This document shows, in pieces, positions 11,135 through 13,764 of a DNA stretch of 64,000 bases. The notes under the pieces were generated by a model, which was not told where the DNA came from, searched no databases, and saw nothing but the letters and a program-made list of their open reading frames with translations. Source of the stretch: Octopus sinensis (Eukaryota); the NCBI RefSeq assembly GCF_006345805.1, contig NC_043013.1:19406001-19470000 (forward strand), read 5' to 3'. Numbering within the stretch: the first letter of the stretch is position 1; each line of letters starts with the position of its first letter. Made by a program: the position numbers and the translations under genes.

Positions 11135-12201
11135 CTTTGTGTCTGTGTTTGTCGAATTGTTCTGAGATTGATTTGTTCGACTCAAAGATGGCTGCAGTCA
11201 AATGTAAGAAGTAAAGTAAAACAAAAAATAAAAGAGCTGATCTTTTAAACTCTGAGTTTCCATGTTCAGTTTTCGGAGCACTGCTTTAGAAAGACATGAA
11301 CTCCACAACACTACACCCACCCCTTCTCTTAAGATACAGGTCCTTTTTCTCTAATGTAAAGAAGATAATATTTTTGGTGAACACTCAATGTGACTAACAG
11401 ACTGTGGGCGACTTTAAGGTTGGCATTATTGACGGAACGGAGAACCGAAAAATAAATAAATAAATTTATAAAAACATAAGAATAAAAACGGAAATACATA
11501 ATAAAATAAAGTATAGAAATTATTTCTGATAGAATATATCGAGTTGGTTTCGTATTCAAAATTACAAAAGAATATTTTAAAGAATATATTGCTAGCGATA
11601 TTATGGAAATTCCAAATATATAATTCTTCAGCTACTGAATAAATCTAAATATATTTCGTCGCCAAAAAAAAAAAAAAAAAAAAAAGGAAGTAAAGAAAGA
11701 AAAGAAGAATGAATGAAATGAAATAAAATAGAAATGATAAGATAACCAATTCGAAAGTATTACAATTTTATGATATTACGGTCAATATGAAAACTAAAAT
11801 GTAAAATGAAATGGAATAAAATAAATTCAATAAAAATATTATTAAAAGAAAAATCACGAAATGAAATCTTGTAAACGAGAATAAAATCAATAAGTAAGAG
11901 GACTGTGGAAGCAAACGTTAAGACAATTGGGGTGGGTGGCTTATGGCTAGGAGATAAAATTTCGGTAAACTGATCTATTTGTACGGTTTCGATTCTCAGC
12001 TGCAACGAGCTTAATTTATTTTTTTTCTTTTAAACTTTATTCAGTTATTGTTTTAGCTTTGATGTTCCACATTTTGCCAATTTCTATTTCAAGATTTTTA
12101 TACTTGCTCAGTTTTTTGTAGGTCTTGACAGATACGTTTATATCAATTGGGACAGTCATATCAATGGGGAGGTATGATTTTTGTCTGAAGTCTTTCAATA
12201 T

Positions 12202-12538
12202 TTTTTTTTTAAAGACTCCGCCGGTTACGACGACGAGGGTCCCAGCTGATACGATCAACGGAACAGCTTGCTCGTGAAATTAACGTGCAAATGGCTGAGC
12301 ATTCCACAGACACGTGTACCCTTAACGTAGTTCTCGGGGATAATCAGCGTGACACAGAGAGTGACAAGGCTGACCCTTTGAAATACAAGTACAACTCATT
12401 TTTGCCAGCTGAGTGGACTGGAGCAACGTGAAATAAAGTGTCTTGCTCAAGGACACAACGCGTCGCCGGGAATCGAACTCACAACCTTACGATCATGAGC
12501 CGAATGCCCTAACCACTAAGCCACGCGCCCTCACTACG
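12202..12538 (-). mobile_element. tRNA-derived SINE, family C, young copy
   Basis: A box TGGCTTAGTGG, B box GAGTTCGATTCC, A-tail, TSD TCTTTCAATAT (12191-12201 / 12539-12549). Confidence 0.95.
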
Positions 12539-12846
12539 TCTTTCAATATAATGTCTAGCCTATTCGCACCCATCTTTCTGTCAGTTTGAATGGTGAAGGT
12601 CCAGAGGAGTGAGATGGGATCATCTTCAAGCACTGGAGGTGGTTTGTGTTCTCACCAGTTTTTATCATGGGGCAGGTCCAAGTTTTTGCAAATTACCCTG
12701 TAAATATATTGTGCTGCTCTATCATGCCTGTTGAGATACACTTTAGGTGCAAGAAGACTACACATGGAGACAACATGATCAATGGTTTCATTTTGTTGTT
12801 GACATATACGACAGGTTGGGCTACTGCCGTTCCTTAATATATTAGC

Positions 12847-13182
12847 CGTAGTGAGGGCGCGTGGCTTAGTGGTTAGGGCATTCGGCTCATGATCGTAAGG
12901 TTGTGAGTTCGATTCCCGGCGACGCGTTGTGTCCTTGAGCAAGACACTTTATTTCACGTTGCTCCAGTCCACTCAGCTGGCAAAAATGAGTTGTACTTGT
13001 ATTTCAAAGGGTCAGCCTTGTCACTCTCTGTGTCACGCTGATTATCCCCGAGAACTACGTTAAGGGTACACGTGTCTGTGGAATGTTCAGCCATTTGCAC
13101 GTTAATTTCACGAGCAAGCTGTTCCGTTGATCGTATCAGCTGGGACCCTCGTCGTCGTAACCGGCGGAGTCTTTATATATAG
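12847..13182 (+). mobile_element. tRNA-derived SINE, family C, young copy
   Basis: Same sequence as 12211-12538 on the opposite strand; TSD AATATATTAGC (12836-12846 / 13183-13193). Confidence 0.95.
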
Positions 13183-13764
13183 AATATATTAGCCTGGTAG
13201 TTTCTTGTAGGTAGGCATTGATTTTGGGTTACTATGATAAACCCTTCTGTTTCTGACTTTAAGCTGCAAGCCACTTACCATTGATAGGTAAGCGCTTTGG
13301 CAACATCGGCGCTATTAGCTCTCTTTGGGTATTTGCCATTGAGAGGTTTTTCTTGCTATTATTCAGTAAGAATATCTAAGCAGCAGTTTTAGCACGGGTT
13401 TTCATACGCTTAGCTTTTTCTGTGCTTGTTTCTAGTATGTCTAATTCTGGAATTTGTTGTATTTGGAATTCACTTAGATATTCCTTTGCCTGTTTTGTTC
13501 CTGAGCGTGATGTTGTTCTTATTTTCATGCTTTGAGTCAAGTTTTAACATCCAGTCATCAGAGTTTTTCAGGTAGGTGTCTAGGTCAATTGTGGCAATGT
13601 TCTTTGCAAAAAATGATCAATCTTCTGGTCGGTTTTGCTGTTTTTTTCTGTCGGAATCGATAAAATAAGTACCAGTTGAGTACTCGGGTCATTGTAATCG
13701 AGAAGCCCCTCGTCAAAGAAAAGAAAAAAAAGGAATTCAGACTTTGTGCCTGTAGTAGAAAGGA

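What the first reader, a model, noticed from the sequence alone, without database searches (positions are those of the whole stretch)
12190..13193. Twin inverted SINEs, 327/328 identical, each with its own TSD, 308 bp apart
12211-12538 (minus) and 12847-13174 (plus) differ at a single base (12299 vs 13086), while other relatives in the window are much more diverged. Each has a distinct 11-bp TSD, and removing both restores the host LINE reading frame, so these are two separate insertions. Either a currently active master inserted twice close together, or the copies were homogenised by gene conversion across the inverted repeat. Read-through RNA would form a 328-bp duplex, an ideal ADAR substrate (cephalopods edit heavily), and the divergent Pol III A/B boxes are intact.
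Basis: partly seen in the sequence, partly recalled or inferred. Interest (0 to 1): 0.75.

Follow-up and report, generated by a model that had tools for sequence, protein, structure and literature searches.

The report
Two young inverted SINE copies in octopus
Two almost identical copies of a short tRNA-derived mobile element landed head-to-head, about 300 bases apart, inside an old decayed LINE fragment of an octopus-like genome; this is an ordinary by-product of recent SINE activity, and its only likely consequence is a long RNA hairpin if the region is transcribed.

Summary
Copy A (12211-12537, minus strand) and copy B (12848-13174, plus strand) share a 327-nt core and differ at one base (12299/13086). 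Each has its own perfect 12-bp target-site duplication, or 11 bp if the preceding C belongs to the element. Their tails differ: A9 against ATATATAG. Deleting each copy plus one duplication restores a gapless C-terminal LINE reading frame that aligns with homologues, the best named one from Octopus bimaculoides. These are therefore two separate retrotranspositions, not a duplication or an assembly artefact.

The element is a tRNA-derived SINE with intact A and B boxes, a CORE-like middle domain, and a 185-nt 3' module. A second SINE at 26856-27189 shares that module.

Perfect duplications, against mostly imperfect ones in an older SINE family here (4-7% from consensus), favour two recent insertions (about 0.4 My, CI 0.01-2.4). 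Gene conversion is not excluded. No genome-wide census was possible.

A read-through RNA folds into a ~330-bp duplex, but transcription and editing were not tested. Inverted repeats as ADAR substrates are already documented as abundant in octopus. Verdict: ordinary, low interest.

The parts
12190..12201 (-). Target-site duplication of copy A, on the 3' side in SINE orientation (GTCTTTCAATAT on the plus strand)
   Evidence: Perfect 12-nt direct repeat with 12538-12549 (family D13)
12202..12210 (-). A9 tail of copy A (T9 on the plus strand)
12211..12537 (-). SINE copy A, 327-nt core. Sub-parts: tRNA-like head 12459-12528, A box 12513-12523, B box core 12470-12478, CORE-like domain about 12396-12458, 3' module 12211-12395
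   Evidence: 326/327 identical to copy B. Rfam tRNA RF00005 scores 25.1 bits. Copy A carries the C at 12299 that the SINE at 26856 also has, so C is the ancestral state
12538..12549 (-). Target-site duplication of copy A, 5' side
   Evidence: family D13
12550..12835 (-). Spacer: host LINE coding remnant between the two insertions
   Evidence: Continuous with the flanks in one reading frame once the SINEs are removed
12836..12847 (+). Target-site duplication of copy B, 5' side (AATATATTAGCC)
   Evidence: Perfect 12-nt direct repeat with 13183-13194 (family D14)
12848..13174 (+). SINE copy B, 327-nt core. Sub-parts: tRNA-like head 12857-12926 (anticodon loop CUCAUGA), A box 12862-12872, B box core 12907-12915, CORE-like domain about 12927-12989, 3' module 12990-13174
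   Evidence: Carries the derived T at 13086
13175..13182 (+). Tail of copy B, ATATATAG, not poly(A). It resembles the start of its own target duplication
13183..13194 (+). Target-site duplication of copy B, 3' side
   Evidence: family D14
12037..13560 (-). Host: old, 5'-truncated non-LTR retrotransposon (LINE) fragment. It holds the C-terminal region with a zf-RVT-like Cys/His motif and is interrupted by both SINEs. The upper boundary is approximate
   Evidence: Pfam zf-RVT PF13966 at E=1.3e-4, below the cut-off. 36 homologues found, best E=8e-58, including O. bimaculoides A0A0L8FXY1 at 69% identity. Gapless alignment across both empty sites. One internal stop and CpG o/e 0.39
26856..27189 (+). 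Related but different SINE. It shares the 3' module (27002-27183, 87% identical), has an unrelated head of unknown origin, has its own duplication ATATAAGGCAC, and has no poly(A)
   Evidence: No Rfam match for its head

Best explanation
Two independent, recent target-primed retrotranspositions of the same young subfamily of a tRNA-derived, CORE-like SINE. Both landed in opposite orientation, about 300 bp apart, in a much older dead LINE fragment of an octopus-like genome.

Shown:
- Each copy is full length from the expected Pol III start, 14 nt upstream of the A box, to the end of the 3' module.
- Each made its own 11-12 bp target duplication at a TT|A(A)TAT site and acquired its own tail.
- The near-identity (1 difference in 327) is simply what two fresh copies of one master look like.

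Inferred: the timing is about 0.4 My since a common template (95% CI 0.01-2.4 My), using the O. vulgaris calibration of JC 0.065 = 18 My. The one difference is a C-to-T change in copy B.

No function needs to be invoked. The one predictable consequence is that any Pol II transcript spanning 12190-13194 would fold into a ~330-bp near-perfect hairpin. Hairpins of this kind are what ADAR hyper-edits in octopus. Whether the site is transcribed is unknown.
For: Separate insertions: distinct perfect duplications and distinct tails, and both empty sites restore a homologue-aligned reading frame with no gap.

SINE identity: tRNA-like head; A and B boxes present and no internal T4 run; CORE-like domain scoring 26 against 13.5+/-2.1 for shuffles, 0 of 1000 reaching it; a 3' module shared with a second SINE that has a different head, as expected for a LINE-recognition tail.

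Youth:
- 24 of 24 duplication positions are perfect. In an older tRNA-SINE family in the same window (4-7% from its consensus, 89-93% pairwise), 3 of 4 scorable duplications carry a mismatch.
- The theoretical chance that both duplications stay perfect at 6.5% divergence is 0.044.
- At the single difference, copy A keeps the outgroup state.

Background: O. vulgaris has 4,544 SINE insertions no more than 2% from consensus, and SINEs make up 11.6% of its genome (PMC13282606).
Against: No genome-wide consensus or copy census could be obtained, so 'young subfamily' rests on the duplications and the pair itself.

The two copies are the only members of the family in 64 kb. For uniformly placed elements, a separation of about 640 bp or less has a probability of about 2%. 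If young copies are as rare per family as in O. vulgaris, a same-family pair this close is not expected by uniform chance. Some local bias or homogenisation may therefore contribute.

CpG retention (o/e 1.1) is not evidence of youth here. The older family keeps as many CpGs as its consensus.
Confidence: 0.72

Rival explanations
1. Gene conversion. Two copies of the same SINE family inserted at different and possibly much earlier times. Intrachromosomal conversion between the closely spaced inverted arms then homogenised them, as happens in larger palindromes.
For: Close inverted repeats are good conversion substrates. Sex-chromosome palindromes are kept above 99% identical in this way (PMC8981503). 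This reading explains both the proximity and the identity without needing a very recent same-family double hit. The identity ends exactly where the homology ends, since the tails and flanks differ, which is compatible with conversion.
Against: Both duplications, which conversion cannot repair, are perfect at 24 of 24 positions. For insertions as old as the window's other SINE family this is expected only about 4-9% of the time. The tail of copy A is a pure A9 run. At the single difference, copy A keeps the outgroup base and the pair shows no obvious shared decay in the module comparable with the SINE at 26856. Moderately old insertions (1-2% divergence) are not excluded.
Confidence: 0.17
2. 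Parent and daughter. Copy A, which has the ancestral base, is itself a transcribed source copy, and copy B is its direct offspring reinserted nearby.
For: Copy A carries the ancestral C and copy B the derived T. Copy A has intact A and B boxes and no internal terminator.
Against: No mechanism is known that biases SINE reinsertion to within a few hundred bp of the source, because the RNA is used in trans by a LINE enzyme (established knowledge). Copy A's first downstream T4 run is 250 nt past its end, so its own transcripts would carry flank that copy B lacks. One base cannot polarise descent.
Confidence: 0.06
3. Artefact or DNA-level inverted duplication. The second arm was created by an assembly error or by a replication template switch rather than by retrotransposition.
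For: Near-perfect inverted repeats are a known signature of chimeric long reads. The window is from a scaffolded assembly with a 100-N gap at 31649-31748.
Against: Only the SINE is repeated. Each arm has its own 12-bp duplication of its own target and its own tail. The 286-bp spacer and both flanks read through as one conserved protein frame. An artefact or template switch would not produce this. The gap lies 18 kb away.
Confidence: 0.03

Closest known systems
CORE-SINEs (tRNA head plus conserved CORE domain plus LINE-type tail), such as mammalian MIR and the octopus OR1/OR2 SINEs of Ohshima and Okada 1994. PMC4824008 and PMC4758252 cite these as the octopus CORE-SINE, one naming OR1 and the other OR2
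   Same: A tRNA-like head with A and B boxes. Directly after it comes a ~60-nt block that aligns to the MIR core at about 69% identity (TGTGTCCTTGAGCAAGACACTT... / ...CTCAGCTGGCAAAAATG). After that comes a separate 3' module, and the whole is flanked by 11-12 bp duplications.
   Different: The OR1, OR2 and OK sequences could not be obtained, so identity with a named octopus family is untested. The tail is variable (A9 against ATATATAG) rather than a fixed repeat.
Inverted Alu (IRAlu) pairs in primate transcripts, and the neighbouring inverted repeats that account for hyper-editing in Octopus bimaculoides (Porath et al. 2017, PMC5625713)
   Same: Two copies of one SINE in opposite orientation within a few hundred bp, predicted to form a ~330-bp intramolecular duplex. 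This is the substrate class described for ADAR in all Metazoa. The paper reports it as especially abundant in octopus, where 4.4e-3 of random loci lie in long near-perfect dsRNA.
   Different: The arms here are 99.7% identical, whereas typical Alu pairs are 80-90% identical. Neither transcription nor editing was shown for this locus.
Arm-homogenised genomic palindromes (sex-chromosome palindromes, PMC8981503) and fragile inverted Alu constructs (PMC7999016)
   Same: Inverted arms more than 99% identical, separated by a spacer.
   Different: The arms are 0.33 kb rather than tens of kb. Each arm is a separate transposon insertion with its own duplication. The ~300-bp spacer is well beyond the 12-52 bp range at which inverted Alus stall replication in eukaryotic cells; a 280-bp spacer is stable in wild-type yeast. 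No special DNA fragility is therefore expected.

Membership tests
tRNA-derived SINE | 5' head derived from a tRNA, with internal Pol III A and B boxes at tRNA-like spacing | tested here: met
   Rfam RF00005 matches 12857-12926 and 12459-12528 end to end at 25.1 bits, below the gathering score of 29, as expected for a decayed head. ARAGORN calls no tRNA. The A box TGGCTTAGTGG is at element positions 15-25 and the B box GTTCGATTC at 60-68.
tRNA-derived SINE | Short non-coding element bounded by target-site duplications, with an A-rich or simple-repeat tail, consistent with LINE-mediated target-primed reverse transcription | tested here: met
   327-nt core, stops in all six frames, perfect 12-bp duplications on both copies, tails A9 and ATATATAG.
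tRNA-derived SINE | Many dispersed copies in the genome | not testable with these tools
   Only two copies and one relative sharing the 3' module in 64 kb. Four collection scans, a protein-level search and two foreign loci gave nothing.
tRNA-derived SINE | 3' end shared with a partner LINE | tested here: inconclusive
   The 3' 185 nt are shared at 87% with a second SINE that has a different head, which fits a common LINE-recognition module. No LINE in the window carries this module.
CORE-SINE superfamily | Conserved ~60-65-nt CORE domain immediately 3' of the tRNA-related region | tested here: inconclusive
   Element positions ~80-142 align to the MIR core with a score of 26, against 13.5+/-2.1 for 1000 shuffles, none of which reached it.
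Octopus OR1/OR2/OK SINE families (Ohshima and Okada 1994) | Sequence identity to the published consensus | not testable with these tools
   The paper and its sequences are not held. A k-mer search of the literature found nothing. PMC15861 is not held.
ADAR hyper-editing substrate (inverted-repeat dsRNA) | Long, nearly perfect intramolecular duplex | tested here: met
   The 1005-nt read-through folds with about 330 consecutive pairs and an MFE of -780.6 kcal/mol.
ADAR hyper-editing substrate (inverted-repeat dsRNA) | Both arms present on one transcript, and clustered A-to-G mismatches in RNA-seq | not testable with these tools
   No expression data are available. The window shows no long complex coding ORF and no Rfam gene.
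Conversion-homogenised inverted repeat | Arm-to-arm identity much higher than the age of the insertions, shown by private variants shared against the family consensus or by orthologous presence in diverged species | tested here: inconclusive
   Perfect duplications argue that both insertions are young.

The most novel reading that the evidence does not exclude
The pair is not a chance double hit. It could be a small palindrome kept identical by continuing gene conversion. Alternatively, it could be a hairpin-RNA locus that is transcribed and used, for example as an ADAR-edited or small-RNA-producing structure. In either case its perfection would be maintained rather than merely recent.
Probability: 0.1. 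Interest if true: 0.45.

Novelty: new member of a known kind. Interest (0 to 1): 0.2.

Why it matters
It matters little on its own. The locus is a clean example of two very recent SINE insertions in an octopus-like genome, which gives it three modest uses:
- It could serve as a presence/absence marker for population or species work.
- It points to a SINE subfamily that may still be active, and to a 3' module shared by two SINEs that should identify their partner LINE.
- If the site lies in a transcribed intron or UTR, it is a ready-made, nearly perfect 330-bp dsRNA for studying ADAR hyper-editing in cephalopods.

None of this is unexpected. Recent SINE activity and abundant dsRNA from inverted repeats are both already described for octopus (PMC13282606, PMC5625713).

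Tried and rejected
1. Genome-wide census of the SINE. Exact-pattern scans of metagenome contigs and genome contigs with two conserved patterns found nothing. A protein-database search with the longest SINE frame found nothing.

2. Other assemblies of the locus. Look-ups of a junction-spanning ORF and two nearby ORFs found nothing on record. The O. bimaculoides homologue P0002 has no contig on record.

3. Borrowed cephalopod DNA. Loci L001 and L002, reached through LINE homologues P0025 and P0020, carry no copy of the SINE. Each shares only one weak segment with the window, so they come from other organisms.

4. CpG retention as a clock. The pair has CpG o/e 1.10, against 0.78 for the window and 0.39 for the host LINE. 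I rejected this as evidence of youth, because the older SINE family keeps as many CpGs as its consensus.

5. Naming the family. The CORE-SINE paper (PMC15861) and the octopus genome paper (PMC4795812) are not held, and a k-mer search of the literature found nothing.

6. Twin priming or a single complex insertion. I rejected this because each copy has its own duplication and the spacer is continuous host coding sequence.

7. The miRNA and snoRNA Rfam hits at 11032-11178 are artefacts of a (TA)n/(TG)n microsatellite and all fall far below their gathering scores.

8. The head of the SINE at 26856 has no Rfam match.

Full report
**What is there**

Window 12190-13194 holds a long inverted repeat with arms at 12198-12541 and 12844-13187, 98% complementary over 344 nt. 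Trimmed to the shared element, copy A is 12211-12537 on the minus strand and copy B is 12848-13174 on the plus strand. The two 327-nt cores differ at one base. Copy A has C at 12299 (read in SINE sense) and copy B has T at 13086.

Each copy has its own perfect direct repeat directly against its ends:
- Copy A: GTCTTTCAATAT at 12190-12201 and 12538-12549.
- Copy B: AATATATTAGCC at 12836-12847 and 13183-13194.

At this base composition the chance of such a match at fixed positions is about 1.5e-7 per copy (inference). The tails are not homologous. Copy A ends in A9, and copy B ends in ATATATAG, which resembles the start of its own target duplication.

**Empty sites**

I deleted each copy together with one of its duplications and translated the minus strand. 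This gives one continuous frame across both junctions (...TRNYQANILRNG... and ...RLDIILKDFRQKS...).

This 179-residue product has 36 database homologues. The best has E=8e-58. The best named one is Octopus bimaculoides A0A0L8FXY1 at 69% identity, and a shorter O. bimaculoides hit reaches 87%. The product aligns to them with no gap at either junction. It carries a weak zf-RVT motif.

The host is therefore the C-terminal part of an old, 5'-truncated LINE on the minus strand, about 12037-13560. It has one internal stop and CpG o/e 0.39. A second, different fragment of the same kind of LINE lies next to it at 13978-14409.

Two exact empty sites, two different duplications and two different tails mean two separate retrotransposition events. 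This rules out a DNA-level inverted duplication, twin priming and an assembly artefact. The only assembly gap in the window is at 31649-31748.

**What the element is**

- The head matches the Rfam tRNA model end to end at 25.1 bits, below the gathering score of 29. The anticodon loop reads CUCAUGA. ARAGORN does not call it.
- The A box TGGCTTAGTGG sits at element positions 15-25 and fits the consensus TRGCNNAGTGG exactly. The B box core GTTCGATTC sits at positions 60-68.
- The element starts 14 nt before the A box, where Pol III would be expected to start (established knowledge).
- There is no TTTT run inside the element. The first one downstream is at +375 for copy B and +579 for copy A.
- Positions ~80-142 align to the core of the mammalian MIR element at about 69% identity, with a score of 26. 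Shuffles average 13.5+/-2.1 and none of 1000 reached 26. The literature cites an octopus member, OR1 or OR2 of Ohshima and Okada 1994 (PMC4824008 and PMC4758252). I could not obtain those sequences.
- Positions 143-327 form a separate 3' module. It recurs at 87% identity in a different SINE at 26856-27189. That SINE has an unrelated head, its own duplication ATATAAGGCAC and no poly(A). Two SINEs with different heads and one shared tail is the classic sign of a common partner LINE (established knowledge, Ohshima/Okada model). No such LINE is in the window.
- In SINE orientation both target sites read TT|A(A)TAT.

**Young pair or homogenised pair**

One difference in 327 nt is 0.31% divergence. 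I used the O. vulgaris calibration of JC 0.065 = 18 My (PMC13282606). This puts the copies about 0.4 My from a common template, with a 95% Poisson interval of 0.01-2.4 My. At the differing site the SINE at 26856 has C, so copy B's T is the derived state. It is not at a CpG.

The window provides an internal yardstick in another tRNA-derived SINE family, with six to seven copies: 14595-14819, 17121-17361, 19939-20178, 28241-28489, 38288-38526 and 59563-59998. These copies are 93-96% identical to their consensus and 89-93% identical pairwise. Three of their four scorable target duplications carry a mismatch. The pair's duplications are perfect at 24 of 24 positions.

Gene conversion cannot repair duplications. 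If both insertions were as old as that family, two perfect duplications would be expected only about 4-9% of the time (and the empirical count). This favours two recent insertions. It does not exclude moderately old copies (1-2% divergence) that were later homogenised.

I first took the pair's high CpG content (o/e 1.10) as a sign of youth and then dropped that argument. The older family keeps as many CpGs as its consensus, so CpG is not hypermutable here.

Recent SINE activity is documented in O. vulgaris. That genome has 4,544 SINE insertions no more than 2% from consensus, and SINEs make up 11.6% of it.

**Proximity**

The pair are the only members of their family in 64 kb, and theirs is the only long transposon-derived inverted repeat in the window. 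Two uniformly placed elements would lie within about 640 bp of each other about 2% of the time.

Genome-wide, N young copies give about N^2*d/G close pairs. With the O. vulgaris figures (N=4,544 across all families, G about 2.8 Gb, d=650 bp) that is about five pairs of any young SINEs, and fewer for a single family (inference). A same-family young pair this close is therefore uncommon unless one of two things holds:
- The subfamily is much more abundant in this species.
- Insertion is locally biased.

This is the main reason I leave 17% on conversion. Only a genome-wide census can settle it, and I could not run one.

**Consequences**

A transcript spanning 12190-13194 is predicted to fold into about 330 consecutive base pairs closed by a ~300-nt loop, with an MFE of -780.6 kcal/mol. 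Long, nearly perfect duplexes made by neighbouring inverted repeats are the main ADAR hyper-editing substrate across Metazoa. Porath et al. report that O. bimaculoides shows one of the two strongest hyper-editing signals of the species they studied. They also report an exceptionally high fraction of loci (4.4e-3) lying in such structures (PMC5625713).

Nothing in the window shows that this site is transcribed. There is no long complex coding ORF and no Rfam gene. The two Pol III units point away from each other and would both produce sense RNA, so they would not pair with each other.

At the DNA level the ~300-bp spacer should prevent the fragility seen for inverted Alus. Those stall replication with a 12-bp spacer, whereas a 52-bp spacer no longer stalls replication in eukaryotic cells. 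A 280-bp spacer is stable in wild-type yeast (PMC7999016).

**Verdict**

The identity is best explained by two recent copies of one active SINE subfamily (0.72). Gene conversion is the main rival (0.17). This is a new instance of a known kind of feature and is of low general interest (0.2).

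Noticed in passing
window 26856-27189 (+), and 30590-30723 (+): A second SINE with its own duplication ATATAAGGCAC shares only the 3' 185-nt module (87% identical) with the pair. Its 150-nt head has no Rfam match, and part of that head recurs at 30590-30723. Two heads on one tail suggests a common partner LINE.
   Followed up: partly
window 14595-14819, 17121-17361, 19939-20178, 28241-28489, 38288-38526, 59563-59764, 59752-59998: An older and more abundant tRNA-derived SINE family of about 231-250 bp, with a B-box-like GAGTTCAAATTCC. 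Copies are 93-96% identical to their consensus and most have slightly decayed duplications. The two copies at 59563-59998 are adjacent and in inverted orientation. I used this family as an age yardstick.
   Followed up: partly
window 13978-14409 (-): A second fragment of the same kind of LINE C-terminus lies directly beside the host fragment. It is 41% identical to the host at protein level, so it is a different, old copy.
   Followed up: partly
window 13175-13194: Copy B's tail ATATATAG looks like an imperfect partial copy of the start of its own duplication, AATATATTAG. This may reflect slippage or microhomology at the AT-rich target during reverse transcription, rather than a templated tail.
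   Followed up: no
window 5353-5577 (+): An open frame ending ...GHVARMDEDRCVRK...GRGRLRETWDEVVKHDLRTLGL...DRDLWK resembles, from memory, the C-terminus of RTE-clade LINEs. It shows no similarity to the SINE tail.
   Followed up: no
window 31542-32201 (-), 46596-46820 (-), 27402-27707 (+): Fragments that resemble mariner/Tc1-type transposase (helix-turn-helix region and DDE C-terminus). The first abuts the 100-N assembly gap at 31649-31748.
   Followed up: no
window 11032-11178, 10882-11060, 16415-16603, 29888-30529: Microsatellite arrays such as (TA)n/(TG)n form self-complementary stretches. They produce spurious sub-threshold Rfam miRNA and snoRNA hits and many short inverted-repeat calls.
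   Followed up: partly
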